Shown: piece by piece, positions 1,992-50,515 of the stretch
Numbering within the stretch: the stretch's first letter is position 1
How the letters are laid out: every line of letters begins with the position of its first letter
Origin: Octopus sinensis
Taxonomy: Eukaryota
DNA: 64,000 bases
Assembly (NCBI RefSeq): GCF_006345805.1
Contig: NC_043026.1
Span: forward strand, 9,796,001 to 9,860,000
Reading direction: 5' to 3'
The notes under the pieces: generated by a model
Seen by the model: only the letters and a program-made list of their open reading frames with translations
Database searches by the model: none
Told to the model about the DNA's origin: nothing
Translations under genes and position numbers: made by a program

Positions 1992-3329
1992 TCAGAGATA
2001 TGGCTTCTCTCCTGTGTGAATACGTTTGTGAGAAGTTAGGTTACTAATTACAGAGAAGGATTTACCACAGATGTCACAATGATGTGGCTTTTCTCCTGAA
2101 TGAATACGTTTGTGAGAAGTTAAGTTATGACTTTGAGAGAATGATTTACCACAGATATCACAATGATATGGTTTCTCTCCTGTATGAATATGTTTGTGTT
2201 TTGTTAAATTATTACTTTGAGAGAATGATTTACCACAGATATCACAGTGATATGGCTTCTCTCCCGAATGAATACGCTTGTGTTTAGTATAGTCACTACT
2301 TATGCGGAATGATTTACCACAGATATCACAATGAAATGGCTTCTCACCAGTATGAATACGTTTGTGCCTATTTAGCGCACGGCGTTTGAAGAATGATTTA
2401 CCACAGATATCACAGAGATATCTCTTTTCCACTGTGTGAATACTTTTGTGTTCAGCTAAGTGACTGCTTAAAGAGAATGATTTACCACACAAATCACAGT
2501 GAAATGATTTCATTCTTGAATGAATAAGTTTGTGTTTAGTCAAGTTGTAACTTTGAGAGAAAGACTTACCACAGATATCACAGTGATACGGCTTCTCTCC
2601 TGAATGAATACGCTTGTGCTTAGTTACTTTATAACTTTCAGAGAATGATTTACCACAAATATCACAGTGAAATGGCTTTTCTCCTGAATGAATACGTTTG
2701 TGCTTCGTGAAGTCACCACTACCAGAGAATGACTTACCACAAATATCACAGTGGTATGGTTTCTCTCCTGAATGAATACGTTTGTGTGTAGTTAAGTGAC
2801 TATTTGCAGAGAAGGATTTACCACAGACGTCACAGTGAAATGGCTTCTCTCCTGTGTGAGTATGTTTGTGAGTAGTTAAGTTACTACTTACAGAGAATGA
2901 TTTACCACAGATATCACAGTGATACGGCTTCTCTCCTGTATGAATACGTTTATGAGAAGTCACGTGATAACTTCGAGAGAATGATTTACCACAGATATCA
3001 CAGTGATACGGCTTCTCACCTGTATGACTACGTTTGTGGGTCGTTAACACATTTTGAGAGAATGATTTACCACAGATATCACACTGATATGGCTTCTCCC
3101 CCGTATGAACACGTACATGCCTAGTTAATTTAATACTTCCAGTGAATGATGTACCACATATATAACAGCAATATGGCTTTTCCCTTGTATGAATACATTT
3201 ATGAGTATTTAGGTTACCTTCTTGTGGGAATGACTTTTTACAGGTATCACAGTCATATGACAATTTACTTTTCTCTTTTATCATGCCTGCAGGGAAAATC
3301 ACATCCTTAAGTTTCTCACTTTCTTCCAT
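1992..3329 (-). CDS. C2H2 zinc-finger protein (ZNF-1), 445 aa, 15 tandem fingers, no KRAB/SCAN/ZAD recognisable
   Basis: CxxC-x12-HxxxH repeats with (T/S)GEKP linkers; N-terminus [25 protein letters not shown] paralogous to ZNF-2 and ZNF-3. Confidence 0.95.
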
Positions 3330-6399: not shown

Positions 6400-7500
6400 C
6401 ATCATCATCTTCGTTTAGCATCCGCTTTCCATGCTAGCATGGGTTGGACGGTTCAACTGGGGTCTGGGAAGCCAGAAGGCTGCACCAGGCCCAGTCTGAT
6501 CTGGCAATGTTTCTACGGCTGGATGCCCTTCCTAATGCCAACCACACCGTGAGTGTAGTGGGTGCTTTTTACGTGCCACCGACACAGGTGCCAGGCGAGG
6601 CTGGCGAACGACCACGATTGGTTGGTGCTTTTTACGTGCCACCGGCACGGGAGCCAGGCAGGGCTGGCAAACGGCCACAATCGGATGGTGCTTTTTACGT
6701 GCCACCGGCATGGGGGCCAGGCAAGGCTGGCAAACGGCCACGATCGGATGGTGCTTTTTACGTGCCACCGGCATGGGGGCCAGGCAAGGCTGGCAAACGG
6801 CCACGATCGGTTGGTGCTTTTTACGTGCCATCGGCATGGGGGCCAGGCAAGGCTGGCAAACGGCCACAATCGGATGGTGCTTTTTACGTGCCACCGGCAT
6901 GGGGGCCAGGCAAGGCTGGCAAACGGCCACGATCGGTTGGTGCTTTTTACGTGCCACCGGCACGGGAGCCAGGCAAGGCTGGCAAACGGCCACGATCGGA
7001 TGGTGCTTTTTACGTGCCACCGGCACGGGGGCCAGGCAAGGCTGGCAAACAGCCACGATCGGTTGGTGCTTTTTACGTGCCATCGGCATGGGGGCCAGGC
7101 AAGACTGGCAAATGGCCACGATCGGATGGTGCTTTTTACGTGCCACCGGCATGGGGGCCAGGCAAGGCTGGCAAACAGCCACGATCGGTTGGTGCTTTTT
7201 ACGTGCCATCGGCACGGGGGCCAGGCAAGGCTGGCAAACGGCCACGATCGGTTGGTGCTTTTTACGTGCCATCGGCATGGGGGCCAGGCAAGACTGGCAA
7301 ACGACCACGATCGGATGGTGCTTTTTACGTGCCACCGTGACGGGGGCCAGGCGAGGCTGGCAAACGGCCACAATCGGATGGTGATTTTTACGTGCCACCG
7401 GCACGAGGCCAGTCGGGGCGGCGCTGGCAACATTCGGATGGTTCTCTTACGTACCACCGGCACTGGTATGACAGCTGCAATTTCCATTGATGTTGATCAA
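6400..7500 (-). mobile_element. Family C RTE-tailed retroposon with expanded internal VNTR
   Basis: 13-bp TSD aactcgtataatt at 6387-6399 and 7501-7513; (ATG)n tail. Confidence 0.85.
6559..7420. repeat. 63-bp minisatellite, about 14 units
   Basis: ggtgctttttacgtgcc recurs every 63 bp (6561, 6624, ...). Confidence 0.95.
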
Positions 7501-10472: not shown

Positions 10473-11723
10473 CTAATTTCCTTTCTCTTTTGTATGAATA
10501 CACTTGTGTGCAATTAATTTACTATTCTCAGTGAATGATTTAGCACAGATATCACAGTGATGTGGCTTCCTTGCATGAATACGCTTGTGGGAAGACAAGG
10601 AACTGGTGTTAGAGAATGATTTACCACAGACATCACAGTGATATGGTTTCTCTCCTGTATGAGTACGTTTGTGTTTAATTAAAGTATACCTTACAGTAAA
10701 CGATTTACTACAGACATCACAGTGATATGGCTTCTCTCCTGTATGAGTACGTTCGTGTATAGTTAAAGTACCACTTGTAGTGAATGATTTACCACATATA
10801 ACACAGTGATATGGTTTTTCTCCTGTGTGAATACGTCTGTGTTTAGTTAAGTGACTACTGTAAGAGAACAATTTATCACAGATATCACAGTGATATGGTT
10901 TCTCTCCTGTATGAATAAGTATGTGTTTAGTTAAAGTAGAACTTACAGTAAACGATTTACCACAGATATCACAGTGATATGGTTTCTCTCCTGTATGAGT
11001 ACGTTTATGTTTAATTAAAGTGGAACTTACAGTAAACAATTTACCACAGATATCACAGTGATAAGGTTTCTCTCCTGTATGAGTACGTTCGTGTGTAGTT
11101 AAAGTACCACTTTCAGTGAATGATTTACCACATATAACACAGTGAAATGGTTTCTCTCCTGTATGAATACGTTTGTGTGTAATTAATTTATTATTTTGAG
11201 AAAATGATTTACCGCAGATATCACAGTTATATGGTTTCTCCCCTGTATGAATACGTTTATGGGCAGTTAAATTACTACCGTCAGTGAACGATTTATCACA
11301 GATATCACAATGATATGGTTTCTCCCCTGTATGAATACGTTTATGGGCAGTTAAATTACTACCGTCAGTGAACGATTTATCACAGATATCACAGTGATAG
11401 GGTTTCTCCCCTGTATGAATACGTTTATGTGCAGTTAAATTACTACCGTCGGTGAATGATTTACCACAGATATCACAATGATATGGCTTTTCTCCTGTGT
11501 CAGTACGTTTCAGAGCAGTAAATTTACTACTTTTATAGAGTGATTTACTAGAGACATCAGAGTAATACAGATTCTCTTCTGAATGAATTTGTTTGTGTTT
11601 AGTTAGGTTTCTCTTTTGAGAGAAGGACTTTCTACAGACATCACAGTCATATGACAATTTTCTTTTCTCTTGTATTATGTCTTTAGGGGAAATCAATGCT
11701 TTACTTTTCTCATACTTCTCCAT
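10473..11723 (-). CDS. C2H2 zinc-finger protein (ZNF-2), 416 aa, 13 intact fingers plus 1 degenerate
   Basis: TGEKPY linkers; three consecutive near-identical fingers (TDGSNLTAH); shared N-terminal peptide. Confidence 0.95.
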   Translation of the reverse strand: MEKYEKSKALISPKDIIQEKRKLSYDCDVCRKSFSQKRNLTKHKQIHSEENLYYSDVSSKSLYKSSKFTALKRTDTGEKPYHCDICGKSFTDGSNLTAHKRIHTGEKPYHCDICDKSFTDGSNLTAHKRIHTGEKPYHCDICDKSFTDGSNLTAHKRIHTGEKPYNCDICGKSFSQNNKLITHKRIHTGEKPFHCVICGKSFTESGTLTTHERTHTGEKPYHCDICGKLFTVSSTLIKHKRTHTGEKPYHCDICGKSFTVSSTLTKHILIHTGEKPYHCDICDKLFSYSSHLTKHRRIHTGEKPYHCVICGKSFTTSGTLTIHERTHTGEKPYHCDVCSKSFTVRYTLIKHKRTHTGEKPYHCDVCGKSFSNTSSLSSHKRIHARKPHHCDICAKSFTENSKLIAHKCIHTKEKGN

Positions 11724-13159: not shown

Positions 13160-13550
13160 TTTTCTTTTTTGTTTTTGTTTCAGTCATTTGACTGCGGCCA
13201 TGCTGGAGCACCGCCTTTAGTCGAGCAAATCGACCCCGGGACTTATTCTTTGTAAGCCCAGTACTTATTCTATCGGTCTCTTTTGCCGAATCGCTAAGTG
13301 ACGGGGACGTAAACACACCAGCATCGGTTGTCAAGCAATGCTAGAGGGACAAACACAGACACACACACATACATATATATATATACATATACATGACAGG
13401 CTTCTTTCAGTTTCCGTCTACCAAATCCACTCACAAGGCATTGGTCGGCCCGAGGCTATAGTAGAAGACACTTGCCCAAGGTGCCACGCAGTGGGACTGA
13501 ACCCGGAACCATGTGGTTGGTAAGCAAGCTACTTACCACACAGCCACTCC
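13160..13550 (-). mobile_element. SINE family A
   Basis: Full-length match to the family. Confidence 0.9.
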
Positions 13551-13972
13551 TGCGCCTATATTAATAAATCTTTATTTTTCAGAAAGTTATGAGGAAATAA
13601 ATTGCTTGTGGGGTGGGCACATATCGGTGGCTATACCAAAAAGCAAATATTCCATAAATATAATAGAATATATTAGTTTGTGAACATTTCAGTGATTGGA
13701 GTGTGTTTGAGAATATTTCTCAAACTGAAAGCAACACAACAAACTAACGTGGCAACGGTGGAGTGTAGAAGGTAGCTTCTATAGCTTAAAATAGCAGCCA
13801 AATCTCGCACGAACCATCGATTGTAGTAGTTCACCCGAGCTCTGCAACAACGACCACGAGGCATTCGACGAAAGAATACCATAAAGTATTGGTTTCTCGA
13901 GTTAAAACGAAGGAATGCGGTTTCTCAATATTTCAGTGGCTGCAGTGTATTTGAGAATATTTTTCAAACTAA

Positions 13973-15230: not shown

Positions 15231-15282
15231 TCTCGTATTTGAAATGTTCGTCACAGTTGGCGACGACCGTTACGGTCTCTGA

Positions 15283-15810
15283 GTTCAAATTCCGCCGAGG
15301 TCGACTTTGCCTTTCATCCTTTCGGGGTCGATAAATTAAGTACCAGTTACGCACTGAGGTCGATGTAATCGACTTAATCCCTTTGTCTATCCTTGTTTGT
15401 CCCCTCTGGGTTTAGTCCCTTGTGGGTAGTAAAGAAATAGGTATTTCGTCTGTCTTTACGTTCTGAGTTCAAATTCCGCCGAGGTCGACTTTGCCTTTCA
15501 TCCTTTCGGGGTCGATAAATTAAGTACCAGTTACGCACTGAGGTCGATGTAATCGACTTAATCCCTTTGTCTATCCTTGTTTGTCCCCTCTGTGTTTAGT
15601 CCCTTGTGGGTAGTAAAGAAATAGGTATTTCGTCTGTCTTTACGTTCTGAGTTCAAATTCCGCCGAGGTCGACTTTGCCTTTCATCCTTTCGGGGTCGAT
15701 AAATTAAGTACCAGTTGCGTACTGGGTCGATATAATCGACTTAATCCATTTGTTTGTCCTTGTTTGTCCCCTCTGTGTTTATCCCCTTGTGGGTAGTAAA
15801 GAAATAAGTA
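15283..15810 (+). mobile_element. SINE family B, head-to-tail trimer
   Basis: Three units joined at gaaataggtatttcgtctg. Confidence 0.9.
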
Positions 15811-16382
15811 TTTTTTCGACTAGAAACTGTTCAAACGTTTTACAGTGTTACTTTACAAGTAAAACATTTCACTTCACTTTTTTATTCCGGGGACAAGAAA
15901 AGGAGATAAAACAAAACAATTAGTTGGAGAGAATATTTAACAAATAAATAATTATGTTTTTAATAAATGACAATTCAAACTAATGTATAAGATGATGATG
16001 ATGATGGTTTTTGTGGTGGTGGGGATGTGAACACTTGCATTTTGGGGACCAATGTGTAAACAAAACACTTGAGTTGTTGAGTAAATGTAAATGAATGCTT
16101 TCTCAGTTGGAAACAACTGGGATTATTTCAAAATGGATTTTTAGATCTTAAGAGGGAGGAAGTGAAAATCAAATCCAAATAACAACAGGAGAGTCTTTGT
16201 GATAAGAGGCTTGCTTCCCAACTACATGGTTCCAGGTTCAGTCCCACCATGTAATCGACTTAATCCCTTTGTCTATCCTTGTTTGTCCCGTCTGTGTTTA
16301 GCCCCTTGTGGGTAATAAAGAAATAGGCAATATACAACCATCCCCACCCGCGTTATATTATGGTTGTCTTGGGTTAAGGCAG

Positions 16383-20943: not shown

Positions 20944-23900
20944 TTATGTATCATAATGAAAGAAAGCAAAAGATTGACGCCCTGGAATAATTCCAAAGAC
21001 CACAAAAGAATCACCTGAAATATCAAAACCAATTACTTTGTATACTTCATTATCATCACAGGTGAGGAGTAAATATTGTTCGATATCTTCAGACGTTTGT
21101 TGTTCCGTATGTCCGGGAATTTGGTAAATATTGTTATATTTATCTGTTATATAAACATGGTCACCGTGTGTGGTTAGATAAGGCCTGTACATATAATAAT
21201 ATAGATCTGTTGGTAGTTTTATACTCCTGACCAAGTGTTCCCTGTACCAACAGACAACATAGTAACCATCCTTCCTCCACCTTTCCTTCTCTATCTTCAT
21301 AACAACAATATCACGATCAGATGTCACTATTATATCCAGCATCTCTATCTCCTCTACCTCCACCCTCTCTCTGACCCCAGAACATACTTCACGATTGTAT
21401 TTACCTGTCCAATAATCGACATCAACAACGTCTACATAGTAGTTATACATCTTACGTTTCGTTCTGTCTTTAATATAATGACCACCACATACGAGTTGCT
21501 TGTCATTATTTCTATAAATCCTATTGTAGTATTTTACTGTACTGATGGTTCCCAAATGAGAGAGATCTCTGTTGAAGAACATTAACTGCTCACCAAAGGA
21601 GAGTATGAAGCAGTCATTTGTCCACCGACATATATCTTGTGGCTGTTGCCTTAACTGTTTATGTTGCAGTATGTCCCCTGTTCTAGTTGTGATTACTGTG
21701 ACAGTGTCTCTAAACACCAACACACTAACATTGCCATCTAACTTAATTAGTTTACTGTTATTGTCTCTCTTATAATCATAATTAACTGGTTCGTCCAATG
21801 TTGGAATTGAAATGGGAACCATTGCTGTCCTATATGGAAGTCTCCTCACTGATATTTCATCAATTCCTGACATACTTTCCGCTACGTAATTACCACATCT
21901 CACCTTTAATCTACCTTTACAAACTATTTCACCTGATTTACCTCTTCTTCCTTCTCCTCCGCTGTCTTTCAGTCTATCAATTAATTCGTTACTGAATATT
22001 TCATTGTTTCTCTGAGATGTAAAGGAAGGGAACTGAAGACCAGAATCAAACTTTAATAACGATATAGATTCTAGAATGCTCACTTGGTCCCCATCAATCT
22101 TTATGCAATGACATTCAATCAATTCATTATGCACACACCAGTAAATGTTTCCCACTTTCCTCCATATCATGCTGTAAGGCACTCCACTTTGCCAGACTTT
22201 ACGCTCCATCAAATCTTGTTGTTTCAACTGAAATATTTCTCGTCTGTTAGGGACTGTGACCATAATATCTCTTTCTCCCGAAAAACACACACCACCCACT
22301 AAAGTTCCAAGGTCTCTGTGACATAGCAGCTCCCCATGGCTATCAAATATTTTAACGTTGCCATTATTCGCTTTTTCACACACAACTGCCTCTCCACCAT
22401 CAGAGATATCAATATCTTTAACTTCAACAGGATACTCGTCTGTTTGTAACCGACAAACAGGAAAGCTTTCCCGATTATTGTTAAACAAGCCTTCAACATA
22501 CAATTTATTACTATGGCTTCCAACAAACCTTGGTCCTTTACAGTTTATGCTAGTGATATCAACTTCATCTATATAAATTCTGTTATTTAAAAATATACTG
22601 TTGTATTCACCATTCTGTGTCAAACACAGAATCTTATTATACCCCATATAGAAACCACCATATCTATCCCACCAGCCATAAATGTACAAATAACTGTCAT
22701 CAATTGTCATATTGTTGTAATCTTTAATGTACTCCATGTAGTGTCTAACCGAATGTAAACAGTGACCATTACGGTTGAAGAAAATGATGAATTTATCGTT
22801 GTAAACAATGATGATATCATTGGCAGTAACTGCAATATCACCGATGTCAAAAATATAATTACAGTCACCATGTCTGTCTCTTGTTAATAATGTTTCAATT
22901 ATGTCAATTTGTTTTACTTCCTTCACGGTTGAATGCCTTTCATCAATATCAACAACATACAGAGTACGTCCGTCTCTCCATCTGCTACACACCAGTAGAT
23001 TGTCCGACAAAGGAGCTATACATTTATATTCATTTATCGTCTGGTATGTTATCAATGACAATGGAAATTCCACTTTCAGTGTCAGCAGTTTGAGATTATC
23101 GTAAGTCGTAATAACCAGTGTGTTCGATTGCCATCGGGACATATTGACATAGTAGCCATTCAATTCGACAGAGTCCAGAAGTTGGCCATCAAATGTTAAT
23201 ATCTTAATGTTTTTATTGTTCCTGTCATATCCTGCAATCAGGTTATTTTCAGTAATAACCAAACGATCAATGCCTACTGGTTGTTCGTCTTCAAAATCTG
23301 GAAGGACAACGAGATCCCGCTGAGCTTTATCAGAAACTGTTAGATCTTGTAGATATATTCTAGAAGACAACATCTCAGCAACACAGATATTTCTAGAGAG
23401 TACATCTACAAGGTCGATGTACATGTTAAGTTGATTATTTGTAACGTGATCTCTGACCACCAAGTTATTGTCATTTATAGCAAACATACGGCTGCTGTCT
23501 ACCAGATAAACGAACATTTCATCACTACATCCACCACAAAGATTGAGTAGAGGTTTGGTGTTGGACAGTAAAACAGCAGGCACCATCTTGCTGCTGCTGC
23601 TGCTACTACTACTACTCCAACTATTACGTCGACAGCTATCAGCAACACCATCACTACCACTACAACCATGACCACCATCACCACCTATTCCAGTGTTGTA
23701 CAGAAATACTTTTTTCCTAGTGACAATTAGTAGCATTAGTGTTTCGTTTTCTATCGTTAAAGATTTTACTACAGAATGGATACCAACCCTATAAATTATT
23801 TCAGTTTGATTATAATTTTTAATGGCTAAAATATCTAAATGAGATGGTTTATCACAATAACAGACAATTTGGTCTTCACCCAACTTACACACCCGTACAT

Positions 23901-24090
23901 AAGGCTGTCTTAATAGTACAGTTCTAACTGTCTTTGAGAGATTTCCGATGACCCTTAATTGTTTCTGTAGGGGTAATGTGACCCCTATTCCAAAACAATC
24001 CCATCGACATATATCTGTAGCTGTAGACGGCAGAGGCAATGTGGACACAATGTCCCCTTCATTAGAAATGTACAACAAGCAATCATGCTT
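20944..24090 (-). CDS. C-terminal part (1048 aa) of a large multi-beta-propeller (NHL/TolB-like) protein
   Basis: 3.1-kb open frame in AT-rich DNA; blade motifs TDICRW..GVTLP, NIKILTFDGQLL, VKIFDSHGELL..VTVP, QPQDICRW; the frame is open upstream of the tracked start as KHDCLLYISNEG. Confidence 0.8.
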   Translation of the reverse strand, partial: KHDCLLYISNEGDIVSTLPLPSTATDICRWDCFGIGVTLPLQKQLRVIGNLSKTVRTVLLRQPYVRVCKLGEDQIVCYCDKPSHLDILAIKNYNQTEIIYRVGIHSVVKSLTIENETLMLLIVTRKKVFLYNTGIGGDGGHGCSGSDGVADSCRRNSWSSSSSSSSSKMVPAVLLSNTKPLLNLCGGCSDEMFVYLVDSSRMFAINDNNLVVRDHVTNNQLNMYIDLVDVLSRNICVAEMLSSRIYLQDLTVSDKAQRDLVVLPDFEDEQPVGIDRLVITENNLIAGYDRNNKNIKILTFDGQLLDSVELNGYYVNMSRWQSNTLVITTYDNLKLLTLKVEFPLSLITYQTINEYKCIAPLSDNLLVCSRWRDGRTLYVVDIDERHSTVKEVKQIDIIETLLTRDRHGDCNYIFDIGDIAVTANDIIIVYNDKFIIFFNRNGHCLHSVRHYMEYIKDYNNMTIDDSYLYIYGWWDRYGGFYMGYNKILCLTQNGEYNSIFLNNRIYIDEVDITSINCKGPRFVGSHSNKLYVEGLFNNNRESFPVCRLQTDEYPVEVKDIDISDGGEAVVCEKANNGNVKIFDSHGELLCHRDLGTLVGGVCFSGERDIMVTVPNRREIFQLKQQDLMERKVWQSGVPYSMIWRKVGNIYWCVHNELIECHCIKIDGDQVSILESISLLKFDSGLQFPSFTSQRNNEIFSNELIDRLKDSGGEGRRGKSGEIVCKGRLKVRCGNYVAESMSGIDEISVRRLPYRTAMVPISIPTLDEPVNYDYKRDNNSKLIKLDGNVSVLVFRDTVTVITTRTGDILQHKQLRQQPQDICRWTNDCFILSFGEQLMFFNRDLSHLGTISTVKYYNRIYRNNDKQLVCGGHYIKDRTKRKMYNYYVDVVDVDYWTGKYNREVCSGVRERVEVEEIEMLDIIVTSDRDIVVMKIEKERWRKDGYYVVCWYREHLVRSIKLPTDLYYYMYRPYLTTHGDHVYITDKYNNIYQIPGHTEQQTSEDIEQYLLLTCDDNEVYKVIGFDISGDSFVVFGIIPGRQSFAFFHYDT

Positions 24091-26279
24091 GTGTCGGACA
24101 CCACTAACTGTCCATTTGGCAGATTACATATTTTACCAATGAGGATTTTGTCATATTCATTTCCTTTTAGTCGTATATTTACATTTCTGATATAAGGATT
24201 CTTGATGGGTAAACAACAGCCAGACCAGTCATGATACCTGTAAAGAAGAACCCTGTGGAATTCAATGTCCAACACATAAATAGTTCCTTGGAAAACAGCA
24301 ATGTGAGAGTGAACAGTCAAAGGTAGTTTCCACTGCCATTTAATGTCTCCATATATATTGTAACATTTCACAACAGACTCTCTCTTGAACAGAACATAAT
24401 AATATACATTATCAGAGTAGATGTGATGAAGACAGCCATAGAACTGAAGGTATTTTTCAAAAAGTGCTTCACCTGATGTGGAATAAAATACCAGTTTATG
24501 TTTCTTTACGTCTACAATTACGAAATTAATTGGAGTTGCAGCAATGGTAACAGCATCATGTTCCAGTGAAATTCTGATTTTGATGTCAACCCTGTCCTCC
24601 TTAATCAACTGAATATGTACCTCTGTTTTGTTTTCATCAGTAATCAGAGCTAAATACTTATTTGACACAATATGACATATTTTAATGTAATCAGTGTGAA
24701 CCTGTATTAAAGGACCCTTGTTTAGTTCAGGACATGTGATATACTGAAGTCTTTTGATTTCACGATAAAAGACCAGAAATCTGTCTGAGTTCATTCTACA
24801 AAAGACTGAAGGAAAGAAGGGGAAATTTAAATAATTTGGGCCAATTTTTCCCCCCGTATCAGTGAATAATATAGCTTTGTTATTCCTGTAGGTAATTAAT
24901 ATAGAAGATGTTGACATAGGTAGAATATTTGTAATATTGCAGGGATCTTCAATATAAATATGGTTGTTTAACTTGGGGGTGTGCAACTGGCGGCTGTATG
25001 ACAGTTTGGGCCAAAAGTCTTTATTTGTTTTAACCACACGAAGAATACCAAAATAATCTGTTAAGAAAATGGCACCTGTGCCAACAGAAATATTCCTACA
25101 TTTCGTGCCTATTTCCCTCTGTGAAACACCACCTGTACCTGAAATCTTATAAATTATATGTCCCTGGAGGACATAAAAATGGTTTTGGTACACAGTGACA
25201 TTGGTTGGGAGATCCAGAGAATGAGTGTAGACCTCAAATATCTGCTGGCCATCCAAATTATAGCATACAACTCTATTAATATTAGCAAATGATATTAATA
25301 GTTGATACTGTACCCCTACAGTAATATCTGCAGGTATCTCTTTGACATCAAATTTATTTGTAATTACATTATCATCCCAATCAACAAGGTATATGGTCTT
25401 CATAAACATTTCCACACCTATGAACGTAGAATGTTGTAAATATGACACCATCATAAAACCTAATTGAAGAGTTTTAATTTTAAAACTCGAGGGATTGATA
25501 ATAAGAATAATTTTTCTAAAGGGTAGGGTGGCCAGAACAGTGTCTTCACTAATTCTGGTTAAATCAGTGACAGAAGATGGGCAACGAACATCATTTCTGC
25601 CACCATCTCTTGTTACATAACATATTGTCATATAATGGCGGGAATATGTTACAATTCCCCCTTGTATGATAATAATATTGGATGTTATGTTGCTTAAGTC
25701 TTCACCAGATTCGTCGATCTTTGCTTCTCTGCTTACAACCGGAGAAAGAGGTCGAAATTTGTTGATTATTTTTGGTGCCTCAGTGGTCTTGTATTTGTCT
25801 TGTAAAACATTTGTATTTATGTAGTGTTCAAGAAACAATTCGAGTTTTCCAAAATTAACAAAATCTTGACTGTAATCGTATTTGTTAATGTCTTTTAACA
25901 AAATATTTGTTCTTTGTGCAAAACACCGAATAAAGACATTTTCGTCCAATCCTACACTTTTTAAAAAGTTACATATCTTTTCCCGAGAATTTATCAACAT
26001 ATTCATTTTGTCTTCATATGCGTTGAATCTTGTATAATATATGTTTGTGTCCAAAACATCTCGTCTTTCAATTATTTCCCGCTTTTTAGGGTCTTCTTTG
26101 TGTCTTTTTTGTCTTTTTGTTGATTGACATGAAGGTCGTTTTTTTGGCATTTCTGTTCTCGAACATTCACCTGCATCATACCTACACTTTTTATTGTAGA
26201 CTCCATCGCTTTTTGTTGTTGTTACAGCTCTTTTCCGAGGTGTAAGTTTACTTGAAACATTTCTTGTATGATCTTCCAT
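23985..26279 (-). CDS. N-terminal part of the same protein: basic NLS-rich head, helical segment, two propeller modules; natural junction at about aa 730 (VSDT)
   Basis: 764-codon ORF; RVVCYNLDGQ, KLVFYSTSGE, VKCYNIYGDI, LPNGQLVVSD blade motifs; candidate acceptor ttcattatAG (26288-26287) 7 nt before the ATG. Confidence 0.8.
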   Translation of the reverse strand: MEDHTRNVSSKLTPRKRAVTTTKSDGVYNKKCRYDAGECSRTEMPKKRPSCQSTKRQKRHKEDPKKREIIERRDVLDTNIYYTRFNAYEDKMNMLINSREKICNFLKSVGLDENVFIRCFAQRTNILLKDINKYDYSQDFVNFGKLELFLEHYINTNVLQDKYKTTEAPKIINKFRPLSPVVSREAKIDESGEDLSNITSNIIIIQGGIVTYSRHYMTICYVTRDGGRNDVRCPSSVTDLTRISEDTVLATLPFRKIILIINPSSFKIKTLQLGFMMVSYLQHSTFIGVEMFMKTIYLVDWDDNVITNKFDVKEIPADITVGVQYQLLISFANINRVVCYNLDGQQIFEVYTHSLDLPTNVTVYQNHFYVLQGHIIYKISGTGGVSQREIGTKCRNISVGTGAIFLTDYFGILRVVKTNKDFWPKLSYSRQLHTPKLNNHIYIEDPCNITNILPMSTSSILITYRNNKAILFTDTGGKIGPNYLNFPFFPSVFCRMNSDRFLVFYREIKRLQYITCPELNKGPLIQVHTDYIKICHIVSNKYLALITDENKTEVHIQLIKEDRVDIKIRISLEHDAVTIAATPINFVIVDVKKHKLVFYSTSGEALFEKYLQFYGCLHHIYSDNVYYYVLFKRESVVKCYNIYGDIKWQWKLPLTVHSHIAVFQGTIYVLDIEFHRVLLYRYHDWSGCCLPIKNPYIRNVNIRLKGNEYDKILIGKICNLPNGQLVVSDTSMIACCTFLMKGTLCPHCLCRLQLQIYVDGIVLE

Positions 26280-26369
26280 AGTGAATCTATAATGAAATAT
26301 AAGTGAAACATTTAGCTTTGTGAAAAATGTTAAATTGTGAGGGAGACGAAGTTCACTTCATTAGTTTAA

Positions 26370-30242: not shown

Positions 30243-30660
30243 GGCGGCGAACTGGCAGAAACGTTAGCACGCCGGGCGAAATGCTTAGCGGTATTTCGTC
30301 TGCCGCTACGTTGTGAGTTCAAATTCCGCCGAGGTCGACTTTGCCTTTCATCCTTTCGGGGTCGATAAATTAAGTACCAGTTACGCACTGGGGGTCGATC
30401 TAATCGACTTAATCCCTTTGTCTGTCCTTGTTTGTCCCCTCTATGTTTAGCCCCTTGTGGGTAATAAAGAAATGGGTATTTCGTCTGCCGTTACGTTGTG
30501 AGTTCAAATTCCGCCGAGGTCGACTTTGCCTTTCATCCTTTCGGGGGTCGATAAATTAAGTACCAGTTACGCACTGGGGATCGATATAATCGACTTAATC
30601 CCTTTGTCTGTCCTTATTTGTCCCCTCTATGTTTAGCCCCTTGTGGGCAATAAAGAAATA
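30243..30660 (+). mobile_element. SINE family B dimer
   Basis: Junction gaaatgggtatttcgtctg. Confidence 0.88.
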
Positions 30661-36023: not shown

Positions 36024-37148
36024 TTAAATTTTAACACCATCTCTATTGAAGTAGTCGTCTTGCGCAGCAATACACCGGTTCCAACGTTCGAGTCACTTTC
36101 GGAATCTGGTCTAGAAGTCGTTTTCGGCAACCGAGTCGAGGACCTTCCGCGGTTCGCACTTGCTCACGACAAGGGTGTCAAAACGGCGACCTTTGAGCTG
36201 TATTTTGATCTTGGGAAAGAGATGGAAGCGCAGGTGCTAAATCTGGCATATTGAGTGGGTGCGGAAGCGATACCATGTTGTTTTTTGGCGAGAAAAATCT
36301 CGAGTGAAGAGAGTTTAGTGACAAGGTGCATTGTGGTCGTGACGAATCCAATTCTGCGCGTTCCGCAAATCCGGTCGCCTTCGCCGAGTGTCCGACCCCA
36401 AACGCTTCAAAACATCGCAGTAGAACTTTCGATTGGCGGTCTGGTCCTGGGGTGCCAATTCTTGATGCACAATACCCCACTCGTGCTACGAAACTTCTGT
36501 GGGGTTTTTTTATATAGGTGCAGGAGTGGCTGTGTGGTAAGTAGCTTGCTTACCAACCACATGGTTCCGAGTTCAGTCCCACTGCGTGGCACCTTGGGCA
36601 AGTGTCTTCTACTATAGCCTCGGGCCGACCAAAGCCTTGTGAGTGGATTTGGTAGACGGAAACTGAAAGAAGCCCGTCGTATATATATATATGTGTGTCT
36701 ATATGTTTGTGTGTCTGTGTTTGTCCCCCTAGCATTGCTTGACAACCGATGCTGGTGTGTTTATGTCCCCGTCACTTAGCGGTTCGGCAAAAGAGACCGA
36801 TAGAATAAGTACTAGGCTTACAAAGAATAAGTCCCGGGGTCGAGTTGCTCGACTAAAGGTGGTGCTCTAGCATGGCCGCAGTCAAATGACTGAAACAAAC
36901 AAAAGAGCAAAAGAGTGAGAGTATACTACATTTCCGAGTGTGATGCTCATGGTAAGAGTTCCAGATCACTCCTTTTCTTCTAGGAATGTTCTTCCGCTTT
37001 TGAAGCGCCCGTGCTACCCGAACCATTGCGAACGAACCATTGCCTCGTTGCCATAAGCTTGCCGAAACATACTCAACGTCTCTGTTGCAGATTTCCGAAG
37101 TTTAATGCAAAATTTCACATTGGCTTTTTGCTCTAACTCTTTGTCCAT
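36024..37148 (-). mobile_element. Degenerate mariner transposase, internally deleted, with a SINE insertion
   Basis: MDKELEQKANVKFCIKLRKSATETLSM...; GIVHQE...FYCDVLKRL...HDHNAPCH...PDLAP...RWNRCIAAQDDYF. Confidence 0.88.
36523..36915 (+). mobile_element. SINE family A nested in the mariner relic
   Basis: Family match. Confidence 0.9.
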
Positions 37149-38738: not shown

Positions 38739-39129
38739 GCTGACTGACACACAGTGATGTAGTTGCCATTTGTTAAGTGCACCCAAATATCCCATATTAT
38801 TTAATATAAACACAGTAATTAACCCGTTGGTTACTGCAAATTAGCTATAATTATTTTTCAAAAATCAGAAATCGTGGGAATATTGTTGAAGCATGGAACA
38901 AACTACCGGCATCAGTTGTTAGTTGTCGGAGCACTGCATCCTTCAAAACTTCCATGCTTCCTGAGATTCGCCAACACTACACCTAATTTTCTCCCCTCCA
39001 TACACACGCAAGCATGTATCTGACTCATACACTGTTCGCTTTCCAGACATTTTTACATTACTGCATATGCTTTTTATGCACTTTTGACAAGTTGTGGTGC
39101 ACCTGAGCACTATTTACTATTTTTTTTAC

Positions 39130-39520
39130 TATTTTACTTGTTTCAGTCATTTGACTGCGGCCATGCTGGAGCACCGCCTTTAGTCGACCAAATCGACCCC
39201 GGGACTTATTCTTTGTAAGCCCAGTACTTATTCTATCGGTCTCTTTTGCCGAACCGCTAAGTGACGGGGACGTAAACACACCAGCATCGGTTGTCAAGCA
39301 ATGCTAGGGGGACAAACACAGACACACAAACACACACACACACATATATATATATACATATATACGACAGGCTTCTTTCAGTTTCCGTCTTCCAAATCCA
39401 CTCACAAGGCATTGGTCGACCCGGGGCTATAGCAGAAGACACTTGCCCAAGATGCCACGCAGTGGGACTGAACCCGGAACCGTGTGGTTGGTTAGCAAGC
39501 TACTTACCACACAGCCACTC
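39130..39520 (-). mobile_element. SINE family A
   Basis: Family match. Confidence 0.88.
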
Positions 39521-40214
39521 CTACGCACTGTATACAATAATTTCATTATTATTTTATTAAAAGGAGTAGGCTTGTTTTGAAAAGGCATATGAACACAGGC
39601 CTCGTGGTTCGGATAAATGATGTTCAACTTTCAATGTGAGTGTTAGAGTTAGGCAAGATTGTGTATTGCAACCCCTCCTTTTCACTCTGTAACGACTAGT
39701 GTGAATATCTTCTCTGGACCTTTTGGGGGTGCGAGAAGCAATCACTTTCCGTTGCTTTAATAATCCAGATCTCTACCAGTCAGAAACAACAAAACGCAGA
39801 CGTAAAAAATAGATATACTTATTGTTTTATACCGGTGAGAAATCAGTGGTATATCTGATATCCTTGGTTCTGGGCGCGCAAGGCTGAAAGTTAATCGCTT
39901 GTAAGATTTACAATGTTCAGCCGCTAAAAACAGAACGGGTTAAAGATGGCCGCGGAATAATGAAGATGATGTTGTCTGCAACAATTTGGTTAAAGCCTTC
40001 GGCCGACTGCTATCAAGAGGGACAGCGAGAAAATATACGTCCGTTGCCTTCGGTCGCTTTGTCTCAAGTCAATGACTGCTGCTGGACGCTAGTGGTCAAC
40101 GTCCTACGATCCCCCTGCCTCAGCTAACTGCCACGTAGGCAAAAGGGTCCTACTTCCGGTGGTGAAAGCACCAACCCCGCACGCGCGAAACAGGAATGGA
40201 CGGTGCGCGCGCGC

Positions 40215-43874: not shown

Positions 43875-44635
43875 ATTGTTGTTGTTGTGGTGATGGTAGT
43901 GGAATGTGTGTGCGTGTAAATGGACGTGTGTTATATTGTTGGTGTTATTGTTGCTGCCATGTCGTTATGGTGGTGGTGGTGGTGGTGGAGATTGTGGTAG
44001 TGGCTGTAGTGGTGGTGCTTGTCCTGCTTTTGGGGATCGTTGTGGCGGCGGTGGTGGTTGTCGTGGTGATTGTTGTGGTAGTTGTGGTTGAGGTGGTGAT
44101 TGTGCTGGTGATGGGAGTGGTTGTTGTGGTAGTGGTAGTGGTGGTAGGTGATTGTGTTGGTAGTGATTGCGGTAGTGGTGGTTGTGCCGATGGTGGAGGT
44201 GGTCGTTGTAGCGGTGGGAGTGTCAGTGGTGGTGGTGGTAGGGGTGATTGTGGTAGGGGTGGTTGTGCCGATGGTGGGGGTGGTCGTTGTGGCGGTGGGA
44301 GTGTCAGTGGTGGTGGTGGTGGTAGTGGTGGTGGTGGTGGTAGTGGTGATTGTGGTAGTGGTGGTTGTGCCGATAGTGGGGTGGTCGTTGTGGCGGTGGG
44401 AGTGTCAGTGGCGGTGGTAGTGGTGGTGGTGATAGTGGTGATTGTGGTAGTGGTGGTTGTGCCGATGATTGGGTGGTCGTTGTGGCGGTGGTAGTGGTGG
44501 TGGTGGTATTGGCTGTTCTGATGGTGATTGTGCTGGTAATGGGGTTGGTTGTTGTGGTAGTGGTGGTGATGATTGTCCAGGTGGTGGTGGTGGTGGTGGG
44601 TAGTGAATGTGCTGCTCGTGCAGGTGGTGGGTGTT
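43875..44635. repeat. (GGT/GTT/AGT) low-complexity tract with internal repeats
   Basis: Direct inspection. Confidence 0.9.
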
Positions 44636-44844: not shown

Positions 44845-45410
44845 TCTTTACTACCCACATGGGGCTAAGCATAGAGGGAACAAAGTCGATTACATCGACC
44901 CCAGTGCGAAACTGGTACTTTATTTATCGACCCCGAAAGGATGAAAGGCAAAGTCAACCTCGGCGGAATTTGACCTCAGAACGTAACGGCAGACGAAATA
45001 CCTATTTCTTTACTACCCACAAGGGGCTAAACACAGAGAGGACAAACAAACGGATTAAGTCGATTACATCGACCCCAGTGCGTAACTGGTACTTATTTAA
45101 TCGACCCCGAAAGGATGAAAGGCAAAGTCGACCTTGGCGGAATTTGAACTCAGAACGTAACGGCAGACGAAATACCTATTTCTTTACTACCCACAAGGGG
45201 CTAAACACAGAAGGGACAAACAAGGACAGACAAACGGATCAAGTCGATTACATCGACCCCAGTGCGTAACTGGTACTTATTTAATCGACCCCGAAAGGAT
45301 GAAAGGCAAAGTCGACCTCGGCGGAATTTGAACTCAGAACGTAACGGCAGACGAAATACCGCTAGGCATTGCGCCCGACGTGCTAACATTTCTCCCACCT
45401 CGCCGCCTTC
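44845..45410 (-). mobile_element. SINE family B head-to-tail multimer (3 units)
   Basis: Junctions gaaataggtatttcgtctg. Confidence 0.9.
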
Positions 45411-45646: not shown

Positions 45647-45748
45647 ATTAAACAATGAAAATATTCATTGTTTTTAATTCTGTAGACGTTCGGTCATTAG
45701 CGCCTCGACTCTTTGTCTTTTCTGTTTTATGAATGAGAGATGTACTTG

Positions 45749-46610
45749 ATTTGTGCGAGGATTTGGCTGCTATTTCTAGCTGTAGAAGAGAGCCGTCTAT
45801 GATTTGTGCGAGGTTTGGCTGCCATTTCTAGCTGTAGGAGAGAGCCGTCTATGATTTGTGCGAGGTTTGGCTGCCATTTCTAGCTGTAGGAGAGAGCCGT
45901 CTATGATTTGTGCGAGGTTTGGCTGCCATTTCTAGCTGTAGGAGAGCCGTCTATGATTTGTGCGAGTTTGGCTGCCATTTCTAGCTGTAGGAGAGCCGTC
46001 TATGATTTGTGCGAGGTTTGGCTGCCATTTCTAGCTGTAGGAGAGAGCCGTCTATGATTTGTGCGAGGTTTGGCTGCCATTTCTAGCTGTAGGAGAGAGC
46101 CGTCTATGATTTGTGCGAGGTTTGGCTGCCATTTCTAGCTGTAGGAGAGAGCCGTCTATGATTTGTGCGAGGTTTGGCTGCCATTTCTAGCTGTAGGAGA
46201 GAGCCGTCTATGATTTGTGCGAGGTTTGGCTGCCATTTCTAGCTGTAGGAGAGAGCCGTCTATGATTTGTGCGAGGTTTGGCTGCCATTTCTAGCTGTAG
46301 AGAGAGAGCCGTCTATGATTTGTGCGAGGTTTGGCTGCCATTTCTAGCTGTAGGAGAGAGCCGTCTATGATTTGTGCGAGGTTTGGCTGCCATTTCTAGC
46401 TGTAGGAGAGAGCCGTCTATGATTTGTGCGAGGTTTGGCTGCCATTTCTAGCTGTAGGAGAGAGCCGTCTATGATTTGTGTGAGGTTTGGCTGCCATTTC
46501 TAGCTGTAGGAGAGAGCCGTCTATGATTTGTGTGAGGTTTGGCTGCCATTTCTAGCTGTAGGAGAGAGCCGTCTATGATTTATGTGAGGTTTGGCTGCCA
46601 TTTCTAGCCA
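45749..46610. repeat. 52-bp minisatellite, about 16.5 units, in the ZNF-3 intron
   Basis: tgatttgtgcgaggtttggctgccatttctagctgtaggagagagccgtcta. Confidence 0.95.
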
Positions 46611-46782: not shown

Positions 46783-47176
46783 ACTCTTTACTCTTTTACT
46801 CTTTTACTTGTTTCAGTCATTTGACTGCGGCCATGCTGGAGCACCGTCTTTAATCGAGCAACTCGACCCCGGGACTTATTCTTTTGTAAGCCCAGTACTT
46901 ATTCTATCGGTCTCTTTTGCCGAACCGCTAAGTAATGGGAACATAAACACACCAGCATCGGTTGTCAAGCAATGCTAGGGGGACAAACACAGACACACAA
47001 ACACACACACGCATATGTATATATATACATATATACGACGGGCTTCTTTCAGTTTCCGTCTACCAAATCCACTCACAAGGCTTTGGTCGGCCCGAGGCTA
47101 CAGTAGAAGACACTTGCCCAAGGTGCCATGCAGTGGGACTGAACCCAGAACCAACCATGTGGTTGGTAAGCAAGCT
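46783..47176 (-). mobile_element. SINE family A
   Basis: Family match. Confidence 0.88.
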
Positions 47177-47346
47177 ACTTACCACACAGCCACTCCTGTT
47201 TATTTTTGCTTGATTTGTCATAAAAATTCTAGGCCCTGCGAGTATCCATGTGATCATATCACTTACTAGAAACAGTAGCAGATTTCCTTTAAATTTCACC
47301 CTCCAGTCATGAATATTGAAGGCTATACTGGATAATAAAGTCATAC

Positions 47347-49018: not shown

Positions 49019-50515
49019 ATGGAAAAGAGTGAGAAAATTATAGACCTGACTTCCCCTGAACACATGATAAAAGAGAGGAGATCGTATGACTGTGATATCT
49101 GTACAAAGTCCTTCCTTCGCAAAAGTGGCCTAATTGTGCACAAACGTATTCATGCAGGGGAGAAATCATATCATTGTGATATCTGTGGTAAATCGTTCTC
49201 TAGTAGTAATTTAACTGCACACAAACGTACCCATACAGAAAAGAAACTACATCATTGTGATATTTGTAGTAAATCATTCTCTAACAGTAGTCACTTAACT
49301 GCACATAAACGTGTTCATACAGGAGAGAAGCCATATCATTGTGATATTTGTGGTAAATCATTCTCTATAAGTAGTCATGTTACTGCTCACAAACGTACTC
49401 ATACAGGGGAGAAACCATATCACTGTGATGTCTGTGGTAAATCATTCTCTGGAAACACTGCCCTAACAAAACACAATCGTATTCATACAGGAGAGAGACC
49501 ATTTCACTGTGATGTCTGTGATAAATCATTCTCTCAAAGTATTCACTTAACTACACATAAACGTATTCACACAGGGGAGAAACCGTATCATTGTGATATT
49601 TGTGGTAAATCATTCATTGCAAATAATTACTTAACTAGGCACCAACGTATTCACACAGGAGAGAAACCATATGACTGTGATATCTGTGGTAAATCATTCT
49701 CTTATAGTTCTGGCTTAACTAAACACAAAAGTATTCATACAGGGGAGAAGCTATATCACTGTGATGTCTGTGGTAGATCATTCTCTCAAAGATCTCACTT
49801 AACTAGACACAAACATATTCACACGGGAGAGAAGCCATATCATTGTGATATCTGTGGAAAATCATTCACTGAAAATAGTTACTTAGTTATACACAAACGT
49901 GTTCATACTGGAGAGAGACCATATCACTGTGATATCTGTGGTAAATCTTTCTCTGAAAATTCTGCCTTAACTAATCACAAACGTATTCATACGGGAGAAG
50001 AACCTTATCATTGTGATATCTGTGGGAAATCATTCTCTCGAAGTAGTAACATAGCTAGACACAAACGTATTCATACAGGAGACAGGCCATATGAATGTGA
50101 TTACTGTGGTAGATCATTCAATGAAAATCGTGATTTAACTAGACACAAACATATTCATTCGAGAGAGAACTCATATAACTGTGATGTCTGTGGTAAATCA
50201 TTCTGTAACCGTAATGCCTTGACTTCACACAAGCGTGCTCATGCAAAGGAAATGCCATATCCCTGTGATATCTGTAGTAAATCATTTTTTGAAAGGGGTC
50301 ACTTAATTGCACACAAGCGTGTTCATACAGGAGAGAAGCCAAATTGTGATATCTGTGGTAAATCATTGACTCATAATTATCAGTTAAGTAGACACAGACG
50401 TATTCATACAGGAGAGAAACCATATCACTGTGATGTCTGTGGTAAATCATTCTCTCAAAATAGTGACTTAATGAAACACAAATATATTCATACAGAAGAG
50501 AAAGGAGAAGGATAG
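49019..50515 (+). CDS. C2H2 zinc-finger protein (ZNF-3), 498 aa, 17 fingers
   Basis: Tandem C2H2 fingers with TGEKP linkers; shared N-terminal peptide. Confidence 0.95.

What the first reader, a model, noticed from the sequence alone, without database searches (positions are those of the whole stretch)
20944..26279. Intronless ~1778-aa protein made of about six tandem NHL-like beta-propellers behind an NLS-rich head, inside a ZNF cluster
Seen: 5.3 kb of coding DNA in one exon, free of TEs in a TE-saturated region. The N-terminus is basic (PRKR, PKKRP, KRQKRHKEDPKKR), followed by a ~90-aa helical segment. A module-opening motif then recurs about six times at ~250-300-aa spacing: VTDLTRI..VLATLP; PSVFCRM..FLVF; ATDICRW..GVTLP; YVNMSRW..LVIT; VGGVCFS..MVTVP; PQDICRW..ILSF. 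Established: similar blades form the C-terminal NHL/TolB-like propeller of molluscan TRIM/B-box-like proteins, normally one per protein, and NHL propellers can bind RNA. No RING or B-box is visible. Inference: a lineage-specific nuclear multivalent scaffold or sensor built by propeller concatenation. I cannot name an orthologue.
Basis: partly seen in the sequence, partly recalled or inferred. Interest (0 to 1): 0.78.

Follow-up and report, generated by a model that had tools for sequence, protein, structure and literature searches.

The report
Broken octopus six-propeller gene copy
This stretch of Octopus sinensis DNA holds one recently broken copy of an octopus-only gene family whose giant proteins string together six ring-shaped "propeller" domains of the NHL/TRIM type; the architecture is unusual and undescribed, but this copy looks like a dying member.

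Summary
The window is Octopus sinensis chromosome CM016888.1. The interval 20944-26279 (minus strand) is not one ORF but two (764 aa and about 1047 aa), separated by a 1-nt deletion near 24091. The frame-corrected protein is 1778 aa.

What I confirmed:
- The region is free of repeats and sits between C2H2 zinc-finger genes.
- The protein has a basic N-terminus, then a helical segment, then six mutually homologous modules of about 220-290 aa (profile-profile probability 84-97%, in register).
- Each module equals one whole C-terminal propeller of molluscan RING/B-box proteins. Those proteins link weakly to bona fide NHL domains.
- The protein has no RING or B-box and no Pfam hit.
- AlphaFold models (pLDDT about 55) are all-beta, with about 24 strands per module, and match only propeller proteins.

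The gene belongs to a family of more than 40 members found only in Octopus species and Argonauta. All are annotated as "uncharacterized", their coding sequence is intronless, and they evolve at dN/dS of about 0.3-0.45.

The syntenic O. vulgaris orthologue is 99.1% identical. It is intact at the deletion site but carries its own premature stop. This copy is therefore a very young pseudogene, or the deletion is an assembly error.

Function (a multivalent intracellular binding scaffold or sensor) and nuclear localisation remain inference. I rate it a new variant of a known kind, of moderate interest.

The parts
20944..26279 (-). Whole coding region of the six-propeller family member (1778 codons after frame correction; stop codon at 20944-20946)
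   Evidence: ORFs; fused protein; full-length 49-69% identity to more than 40 Octopus proteins; coordinates verified
24090..24092 (-). Frameshift site: one C is missing (window GAC A-C AAG, O. vulgaris GAC ACC AAG). It lies in the first blade of module 3
23985..24089 (-). Out-of-frame tail of ORF1 (34 codons plus stop). Public databases hold this truncated 764-aa product as a protein
25698..26279 (-). Head, residues 1-194: a basic, poorly conserved N-terminus with NLS-like clusters, then predicted helices at 64-156
   Evidence: no similarity to any module or to B-box/coiled-coil regions
24945..25697 (-). Module 1 (residues 195-445), propeller-like, about 23 beta-strands in the model
   Evidence: 84% to the single-propeller profile
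24153..24944 (-). Module 2 (residues 446-709), propeller-like, about 23 beta-strands in the model
   Evidence: 93% to M4, 89% to M3
23284..24152 (-). Module 3 (residues 710-999). It contains the frameshift and a Gly/Ser-rich low-complexity insert (23566-23691) that varies in length between species
   Evidence: 94.8% to the single-propeller profile
22429..23283 (-). Module 4 (residues 1000-1284), the best-modelled propeller. Codon W1204 (22669-22671) is TGA in the O. vulgaris orthologue
   Evidence: 97.7% over 191 columns
21775..22428 (-). Module 5 (residues 1285-1502), the shortest and most diverged. The structure model is not confident here
   Evidence: 86% to M4; 78%
20947..21774 (-). Module 6 (residues 1503-1778), confidently modelled as beta-sheet (pLDDT up to 93)
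   Evidence: 97% to M4, 96% to M3
26280..26369 (-). Conserved upstream stretch with a polypyrimidine tract and a TAG acceptor (AG at 26288-26287) 7 nt before the ATG. This implies a 5'-UTR intron
   Evidence: in O. vulgaris models an upstream exon is spliced at this point

Best explanation
The interval is one copy of a multigene family restricted to octopods. The family encodes soluble proteins of about 200 kDa. Each has a basic, disordered N-terminus, a helical segment of about 90 residues, and six directly abutting homologous modules of about 220-290 residues. Each module is equivalent to the entire six-bladed NHL-like beta-propeller that occurs once, at the C-terminus, in molluscan RING/B-box/coiled-coil (TRIM-like) proteins.

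The family most likely arose from such a propeller that lost the E3-ligase half and was duplicated internally six times. It then spread by DNA-level duplication, mostly on one small ZNF-rich chromosome. It now evolves by birth and death under moderate constraint.

The window's copy kept an open frame under purifying selection for a long time (terminal-branch dS 0.34, dN/dS 0.27). It now carries a 1-nt deletion that truncates it after two propellers. Its syntenic O. vulgaris orthologue carries a different, independent stop codon. This locus is therefore most likely a very young pseudogene.

Mechanism for the intact family members is inferred, not shown. They are intracellular, non-enzymatic, multivalent binding platforms. 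Each propeller face offers a ligand site for protein or RNA, as in TRIM-NHL proteins. The helical segment may mediate oligomerisation. Family turnover and local clusters of amino-acid replacements suggest that the ligands change quickly, as in immune, viral or TE recognition.
For: Shown here:
- Two ORFs and a 1-nt deletion.
- The window is O. sinensis CM016888.1.
- 41 homologue clusters, all Octopus.
- An exhaustive search of 1.84 billion representatives finds only Octopus and Argonauta members plus five weak molluscan or NHL hits.
- Six in-register homologous modules.
- Modules match a profile of single-propeller RING/B-box and NHL proteins at up to 97.7%.
- Those relatives carry RING, B-box or NHL Pfam domains, and P0063 hits the TRIM3 NHL structure.
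- The top PDB sequence hits of the family profile are the Brat and TRIM71 NHL domains, though not significantly.
- AlphaFold models are all-beta with short regular strands, and Foldseek returns only multi-propeller proteins at E about 1e-14.
- No TM segment or signal peptide.
- The CDS is intronless in P0003, P0042, P0008, P0009 and P0069.
- A splice acceptor is conserved upstream.
- dN/dS is 0.32-0.34 against paralogues, 0.27 on the terminal branch, and equal before and after the frameshift.
- The syntenic orthologue is 99.07% identical and has a TGG-to-TGA change at codon 1208.
- Many fragmentary family members exist in O. vulgaris.
- Young paralogues show pN/pS 0.45 over most of the gene but 4.4 in part of M6.
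Against: - Structure models are only moderately confident (mean pLDDT 55-57). M5 and half of M3 are not resolved, so six complete propellers is an extrapolation from homology.
- No Pfam NHL hit reaches threshold in any family member.
- Foldseek's best hits are WD40-type propellers, not NHL.
- The deletion could be a long-read assembly error (CC to C). It is the only 1-nt indel in 6.5 kb of orthologous alignment.
- Orthologue dN/dS is 0.40 (p = 0.002 for below 1), so constraint acted until very recently. That fits either a very young pseudogene or a still-functional gene.
- No expression, localisation or ligand data were available.
- The excess of replacements in M6 was picked post hoc from one gene pair.
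Confidence: 0.72

Rival explanations
1. The gene is intact and functional in O. sinensis. On this view the 1-nt deletion is a consensus error of the PacBio-based assembly, and the locus encodes the full 1778-aa protein.
For: The missing base lies in a CC dinucleotide. It is the sole lesion in 5.3 kb. dN/dS is equal before and after the site. The window copy keeps the family-consensus residue at 16 of 25 polarisable differences from its orthologue. Orthologue dN/dS is 0.40.
Against: The orthologue in the sister species has an independent nonsense mutation in a HiFi-era assembly. Fragmented copies are common in the family. No other 1-nt indel occurs in 6.5 kb of orthologous alignment, so the local error rate looks low.
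Confidence: 0.3
2. The ORF belongs to a transposable element or an endogenous virus rather than to a host gene family.
For: It is multi-copy and intronless in a TE-rich region. Some public models fuse it to a DUF4371 (transposase-related) domain.
Against: No TE or viral domain appears in Pfam. No terminal repeats are specific to the gene; the flanking repeats are high-copy SINE-like elements found all over the window. Paralogue DNA homology stops about 90 nt upstream and about 66 nt downstream of the CDS and includes a conserved splice acceptor. Copies are 30-50% diverged under purifying selection. The locus is syntenic between two species. The viral structure library gives only generic WD40/RCC1 hits.
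Confidence: 0.03
3. The modules are propellers of another class (WD40-like, seven-bladed), and the NHL/TRIM link is spurious.
For: Foldseek top hits are WD40-type tandem propellers, DDB1 and IFT-A. Weak Pfam hits include WDR90, ANAPC4 and CFAP43 propellers.
Against: Foldseek on multi-domain, low-confidence models favours any multi-propeller target (TM 0.15-0.25). All sequence evidence points to the six-bladed clan: NHL, DUF4934, Mala_s_1 and SGL hits, plus Brat, TRIM71 and TRIM3. Module length of about 250 aa with about 24 strands fits six blades.
Confidence: 0.07
4. Family members are ubiquitin-ligase substrate adaptors that work with a separate RING partner. This would be a split TRIM, rather than a stand-alone scaffold or sensor.
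For: The propeller derives from RING/B-box proteins. Multi-propeller DDB1 is such an adaptor (structural resemblance only).
Against: No RING, B-box or detectable coiled-coil homology is present. No partner is encoded nearby in the window. There is nothing to test this with here.
Confidence: 0.1

Closest known systems
Molluscan RING / B-box / coiled-coil proteins with a C-terminal NHL-like propeller (for example Batillaria attramentaria BaRGS_006208 and BaRGS_004694, Potamilus streckersoni CHS0354_012137)
   Same: Their single C-terminal propeller aligns in register with individual modules. Both share the two-blade opening '...LPNGxLVVsDxxNxCLLyis..G.i...L.LPs.P.DIC.w....vaVtLP....l.vi'.
   Different: [quoted passage not shown] Here there are six propellers in a row, with no RING or B-box, and a head unrelated to their N-terminal half (hhalign 0.3% or less).
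Canonical TRIM-NHL proteins with solved NHL domains (Brat, TRIM71/LIN-41, TRIM2/3, Thin, Mei-P26)
   Same: They are the top-ranked sequence hits of the family profile in the PDB and significant or near-significant hits for the single-propeller relative P0063. They have a six-bladed propeller of about 280 aa that binds RNA or protein on one face (established knowledge).
   Different: The direct match is not significant (E 0.17-0.57). Pfam NHL is below threshold (best 18.5 bits against 20, in paralogue P0048; no hit in the window protein). The copy number per chain is different, and there is no E3 module.
Multi-propeller scaffolds such as DDB1/CPSF160 (three propellers), LRP5/6 (four six-bladed YWTD propellers), EML/WDR90/IFT-A tandem propellers
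   Same: These are the best structural matches to the two models. The shared principle is several propellers in one chain acting as a docking platform.
   Different: There is no sequence relationship. They differ in blade type or number. LRP propellers are extracellular and separated by EGF domains. The TM-scores here are only 0.15-0.25.

Membership tests
NHL-repeat beta-propeller (Pfam PF01436, six-bladed propeller clan) | Pfam NHL repeat match at or above the gathering score (20 bits) | tested here: not met
   No NHL hit at E<=1 in the window protein or in 17 members. Paralogue P0048 scores 18.5 bits.
NHL-repeat beta-propeller (Pfam PF01436, six-bladed propeller clan) | Detectable homology to proteins that do pass the NHL threshold | tested here: met
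   P0063 (NHL 22.1 bits; TRIM3 NHL E 0.0037) and P0100 (NHL precomputed) are library-wide hits of the family profiles. A profile that includes them matches M4 at 97.7%, M3 at 94.8% and M1 at 84%.
NHL-repeat beta-propeller (Pfam PF01436, six-bladed propeller clan) | Six four-stranded blades in about 250-290 residues | tested here: inconclusive
   DSSP of the AlphaFold models gives about 23-24 short strands in each of M1 and M2, 20 in M4 and about 27 in M6. Mean pLDDT is 55-57, and M5 and part of M3 are unresolved.
NHL-repeat beta-propeller (Pfam PF01436, six-bladed propeller clan) | Significant sequence match to a solved NHL domain | tested here: inconclusive
   Brat and TRIM71 NHL domains are the top four PDB hits, but at E 0.17-0.57.
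TRIM / tripartite-motif proteins | N-terminal RING finger | tested here: not met
   No RING family hit in Pfam for the window protein or 17 members.
TRIM / tripartite-motif proteins | B-box zinc finger | tested here: not met
   No B-box hit. The head has too few Cys/His (5 Cys in 194 aa).
TRIM / tripartite-motif proteins | Coiled coil preceding the C-terminal domain | tested here: inconclusive
   Helices are predicted at 64-156 with low confidence. There is no profile similarity to the B-box/coiled-coil parts of P0065, P0067 or P0096.
WD40-repeat propellers | WD40 repeat profile matches | tested here: not met
   Only scattered sub-threshold hits to WD40-type propeller families in 1-3 of 17 members. 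The Foldseek resemblance is at the level of the fold class.
Transposable-element or viral ORF | TE or viral catalytic or structural domains, terminal repeats, recent non-syntenic copies | tested here: not met
Processed (retroposed) gene copy | Loss of intron sequence at the 5' end, poly(A) tract, homology limited to mRNA | tested here: not met
   About 90 nt of conserved intronic sequence with the acceptor is retained in four paralogues. There is no poly(A) after the 3' end, only a (TTA/TTG)n microsatellite.
Pseudogene (this copy) | Disabling lesion confirmed against an intact orthologue or relatives | tested here: met
   A 1-nt deletion relative to the O. vulgaris orthologue and all paralogues. 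The orthologue has its own stop. Whether the deletion is real or an assembly error is not testable with these tools.

The most novel reading that the evidence does not exclude
Octopods have evolved a private class of intracellular receptors: giant proteins with six NHL-like propellers, descended from TRIM-like immune proteins but freed of the ligase. They are kept as a rapidly turning-over tandem array beside the ZNF clusters. Individual propellers (M4, M6) diversify under positive selection to recognise changing viral, TE or other non-self ligands. This would be an invertebrate analogue of the TRIM5/NLR-type arms-race families, built on a new multivalent architecture.
Probability: 0.15. Interest if true: 0.75.

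Novelty: new variant of a known kind. Interest (0 to 1): 0.45.

Why it matters
Cephalopod genomes are known for lineage-specific expansions such as protocadherins, C2H2 zinc fingers and GPCRs. This family of more than 40 genes, each encoding about 200 kDa, has no name, no Pfam domain and no paper that I could find.

Six NHL-type propellers fused head to tail, without a RING or B-box, is an architecture I could not find described. It shows how a single recognition domain of TRIM-like proteins can be turned into a multivalent platform. The family also offers a tractable case of birth-and-death evolution with independent recent losses in sister species.

For genome annotation there is a practical point. 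The public models at this locus (a 764-aa protein in O. sinensis; 305-aa and 439-aa fragments in O. vulgaris) are pieces of one broken 1778-codon gene. The specific copy in this window is probably non-functional, which limits its own importance.

Tried and rejected
- BLASTP self-comparison found no internal repeats. The repeats only appear with family profiles and correct module boundaries; my first boundaries gave weaker, partly out-of-register scores.
- Pfam on the window ORFs and on 17 members gave no family at threshold.
- A homologue search with the Potamilus propeller alone returned only itself, so that search was wasted.
- Foldseek against PDB and viral libraries gave only generic multi-propeller hits with low TM. 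It cannot tell NHL from WD40 on these models.
- Head against the B-box/coiled-coil regions of TRIM-like relatives showed no similarity.
- A search for gene-specific LTRs or TIRs found only high-copy SINE-like elements and microsatellites.
- The Logan contigs carrying P0063 share no DNA with octopus loci, so their organism remains unknown.
- Literature searches by topic and by LOC identifiers found no paper on the family.
- Exact look-ups of ORF2-derived products were not in the collection.
- I expected the 'conserved' paralogue P0042 to be strongly constrained, but its vulgaris-bimaculoides dN/dS is 0.39, like the rest of the family.


Full report
**1. What is in the sequence**

On the minus strand, the ORF listing gives two ORFs, not one: 26279..23985 (764 aa, ATG start) and 24078..20944 (1044 aa). 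They are in different frames and overlap by 94 nt. Reading the second frame upstream to 24123 shows that the break lies in '...NGQLVVSDT | (K)HDCLLYISNEGD...'. Only two bases (AG, 24089-24088) remain between the last in-frame codon of part 1 and the first of part 2.

The window has no ambiguous bases. An exact look-up places it on Octopus sinensis chromosome CM016888.1 at about 9.82 Mb. ORF1, with its out-of-frame tail, is deposited in NCBI and UniRef as a 764-aa protein.

**2. Surroundings**

- Three ORFs are C2H2 zinc-finger arrays: 1992-3329(-), 10473-11723(-) and 49019-50515(+).
- By comparison with itself and with the flanks of other octopus loci, 44-56% of the window outside the gene is repeated DNA. 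Inside 20944-26279 the figure is 0%.
- The flanking direct repeats are copies of high-copy SINE-like elements that occur all over the window, not gene-specific termini.
- Seven nucleotides upstream of the ATG there is a polypyrimidine tract plus TAG (AG at 26288-26287). It is conserved almost base for base in paralogues P0001, P0003 and P0007.
- In O. vulgaris models a short upstream exon is spliced at this point. The CDS itself is a single exon in P0003, P0042, P0008, P0009 and P0069.
- DNA homology between paralogous loci ends about 90 nt upstream and about 66 nt downstream of the CDS.

**3. The family**

- A word-indexed search found 41 clusters, all from O. vulgaris, O. sinensis or O. bimaculoides. 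All are 'uncharacterized', mostly 1650-1900 aa, 49-69% identical over the full length, and many sit on one 29-Mb O. vulgaris chromosome.
- An exhaustive HMM search of 1.84 billion representatives, using a profile of the first 1158 positions, found only 31 proteins. Those were further Octopus members and fragments, two Argonauta hians proteins, and five weak outsiders.
- Two divergent paralogue lineages (P0042/68/69 and P0048/72) lie on other chromosomes and have 1:1 orthologues in three species at 92-99% identity.
- I found no paper on the family. Octopus-specific C2H2 expansions are documented (PMC12513265).

**4. Architecture**

BLASTP self-comparison shows nothing. Profile-profile comparison then gives in-register matches linking all six modules:

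| Module pair | hhalign probability |
|---|---|
| M4-M6 | 97% (181 columns) |
| M3-M6 | 96% |
| M2-M4 | 93% |
| M2-M3 | 89% |
| M4-M5 | 86% |
| M1-M2 | 84% |
| Head vs any module | 0.1% or less |

AlphaFold2 with the 17-sequence alignment gave moderate models (pLDDT 56.5 and 55.1).
- Helices are predicted at residues 64-156, followed by uninterrupted short beta-strands from 183 to 681, about 23-24 per module.
- Confident beta regions lie at 999-1229 and 1479-1778.
- Regions 864-993 and 1231-1480 are unresolved.

Foldseek returns only multi-propeller proteins at E about 1e-14 but TM 0.15-0.25: EML-like, IFT-A, UTPs, BamB, LRP6, DDB1 and CPSF160. The viral library gives generic WD40/RCC1 hits. 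The protein has no hydrophobic segment or signal peptide.

**5. Relation to NHL/TRIM**

- Pfam finds no NHL, RING or B-box in the window protein or in 17 members. There are only sub-threshold hits to six-bladed families (DUF4934 in 8 of 17, Mala_s_1) and a few WD40-type propellers. Paralogue P0048 scores 18.5 bits on NHL against a threshold of 20.
- The only non-family hits of the exhaustive search are as follows:
  - a 282-aa single-propeller protein, P0063 (NHL 22.1 bits; TRIM3 NHL structure E 0.0037);
  - P0064 (NHL 17 bits);
  - a Potamilus RING/B-box/propeller protein;
  - a Batillaria RING/B-box/coiled-coil/propeller protein.
- A second profile search added four more Batillaria proteins (B-box, SGL) and an NHL-positive protein.
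- The alignments show the shared two-blade opening.
- A profile of these single propellers matches M4 at 97.7% over 191 columns, M3 at 94.8%, M1 at 84.4%, M5 at 78.3%, M6 at 68.5% and M2 at 19.7%, all in register, and the head at 0.1%.
- The family profile's top four PDB sequence hits are the Brat and TRIM71 NHL domains, but at E 0.17-0.57.

I conclude that each module corresponds to one whole TRIM-like C-terminal propeller. The NHL relationship is real but remote, and the protein is neither a Pfam-level NHL protein nor a TRIM.

**6. State of this copy**

The last profile search turned up a 305-aa O. vulgaris protein 98% identical to part of the window protein. Its locus (L010, OX597841.1:3.14 Mb) is collinear with the window over more than 20 kb, including the neighbouring ZNF gene. 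It is 98.9% identical across 27395-20877.

In the CDS alignment (99.07% identity) the orthologue differs as follows:
- It has GAC ACC AAG where the window has GAC A-C AAG.
- It has three in-frame indels in the Gly/Ser low-complexity insert.
- It has its own premature stop, TGG to TGA at its codon 1208 (window W1204).

The two sister species therefore carry different single disabling lesions.

There are 18-19 synonymous and 29-30 non-synonymous differences (dN 0.0069, dS 0.0173, ratio 0.40, p = 0.002 for below 1). The 1.1 kb of upstream non-coding DNA differs by 0.63%. Polarised by the family consensus, 16 replacements are derived in O. vulgaris, 9 in the window copy and 5 are ambiguous.

Against paralogues, dN/dS is 0.32-0.34, and 0.27 on the window's terminal branch (dS 0.34). 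It is uniform across modules and equal before and after the frameshift. The frame was therefore maintained for a time several-fold longer than the vulgaris-bimaculoides split (dS 0.10), and the lesion is very recent or artefactual. Fragmented members are common in O. vulgaris.

**7. Family dynamics**

- The 'conserved' paralogue P0042/P0069 evolves at dN/dS 0.39.
- The young paralogues P0008/P0009 differ at pN/pS 0.85 overall. This breaks down to 0.45 over most of the gene, 1.7 in part of M4 (not significant) and 4.4 in part of M6 (p about 0.01, chosen post hoc). Their dS is mosaic at 0.01-0.13, which suggests gene conversion.
- NLS-like motifs in the head are present in the window copy but are not conserved family-wide.

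**8. Interpretation**

- Shown: a frameshifted member of an octopod-restricted family with a head plus six homologous propeller-like modules. The modules are remotely related to the TRIM-like/NHL propeller. The gene is not a TE, and it was under purifying selection until recently.
- Inferred:
  - origin by loss of the RING/B-box half and six-fold internal duplication;
  - function of intact members as intracellular multivalent binding scaffolds or sensors;
  - possible diversifying selection on M4 and M6;
  - nuclear localisation, which rests only on non-conserved basic motifs.
- The main open point for this locus is whether the single-base deletion is real.

**9. Verdict**

The structural interpretation is supported as remote homology. 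The functional interpretation is untested. The locus itself is most likely a dying copy. I rate the novelty as a new variant of a known kind, and the interest as moderate (0.45).

Noticed in passing
L001 21440-21697 and 21881-22138 (O. vulgaris P0001 locus): Two extra tandem copies of the last ~91 codons of the family gene lie just downstream of its stop codon (66-67% aa identity to the gene's own C-terminus).
   Followed up: no
window 6561-7412: GC-rich 63-bp satellite, 13.5 copies, 92% matches. It generates five overlapping ORFs of 224-324 aa on both strands; the one scanned has no Pfam match.
   Followed up: partly
window 45747-46608: 52-bp satellite, 16.6 copies, 98% matches. Next to it is a strongly GC-skewed (TGG)n-like stretch at 43968-44599 that carries a 196-aa ORF with no Pfam hit.
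   Followed up: no
window 15278-15813, 30290-30659, 44883-45360 (and many single copies): A ~184-bp unit (TCTGAGTTCAAATTCCGCCGAGGTCGAC...) in short tandem arrays, 90-96% similar to copies near other family loci. It is SINE-like; ARAGORN calls no tRNA anywhere in the window.
   Followed up: partly
window 13175-13559, 36514-36920, 39125-39526, 46795-47198, 52384-52774, 58898-59307 and others: A ~400-bp high-copy interspersed element in both orientations. Copies at 17.7-18.4 kb and 29.4-29.7 kb, which adjoin (CA)n(TA)n microsatellites, bracket the gene and could be mistaken for LTRs.
   Followed up: partly
window 1992-3329(-), 10473-11723(-), 49019-50515(+): Three C2H2 zinc-finger ORFs with 12-17 fingers each (84-bp periodicity). 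The 10.5-11.7 kb gene is syntenic in O. vulgaris (L010 20028-20916).
   Followed up: partly
L011 / L012 (O. vulgaris P0008 and P0009): These young paralogues have mosaic synonymous divergence (0.01-0.13 along the gene), suggesting gene conversion. Amino-acid replacements cluster in parts of modules 4 and 6 (pN/pS 1.7 and 4.4).
   Followed up: partly
L010 10001-10918 and 11324-12643; window 23985-26279: Public annotations split this one broken gene into separate 'proteins': 305 aa and 439 aa in O. vulgaris, and 764 aa in O. sinensis. Other public models fuse family members to ZNF arrays (P0006, P0054) or to a DUF4371 domain (P0016).
   Followed up: partly
window 23566-23691: A Gly/Ser-rich low-complexity insert inside module 3 differs by three in-frame indels (3, 6 and 3 nt) between O. 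sinensis and O. vulgaris, and varies in length across the family.
   Followed up: partly
L006-L009 (Logan runs SRR8281674, SRR8281695, ERR12921340/41): The closest single-propeller relative (P0063, 282 aa, NHL-positive) occurs only in read-assembly contigs from an unidentified organism (35% GC). It shares no DNA with the octopus loci.
   Followed up: partly
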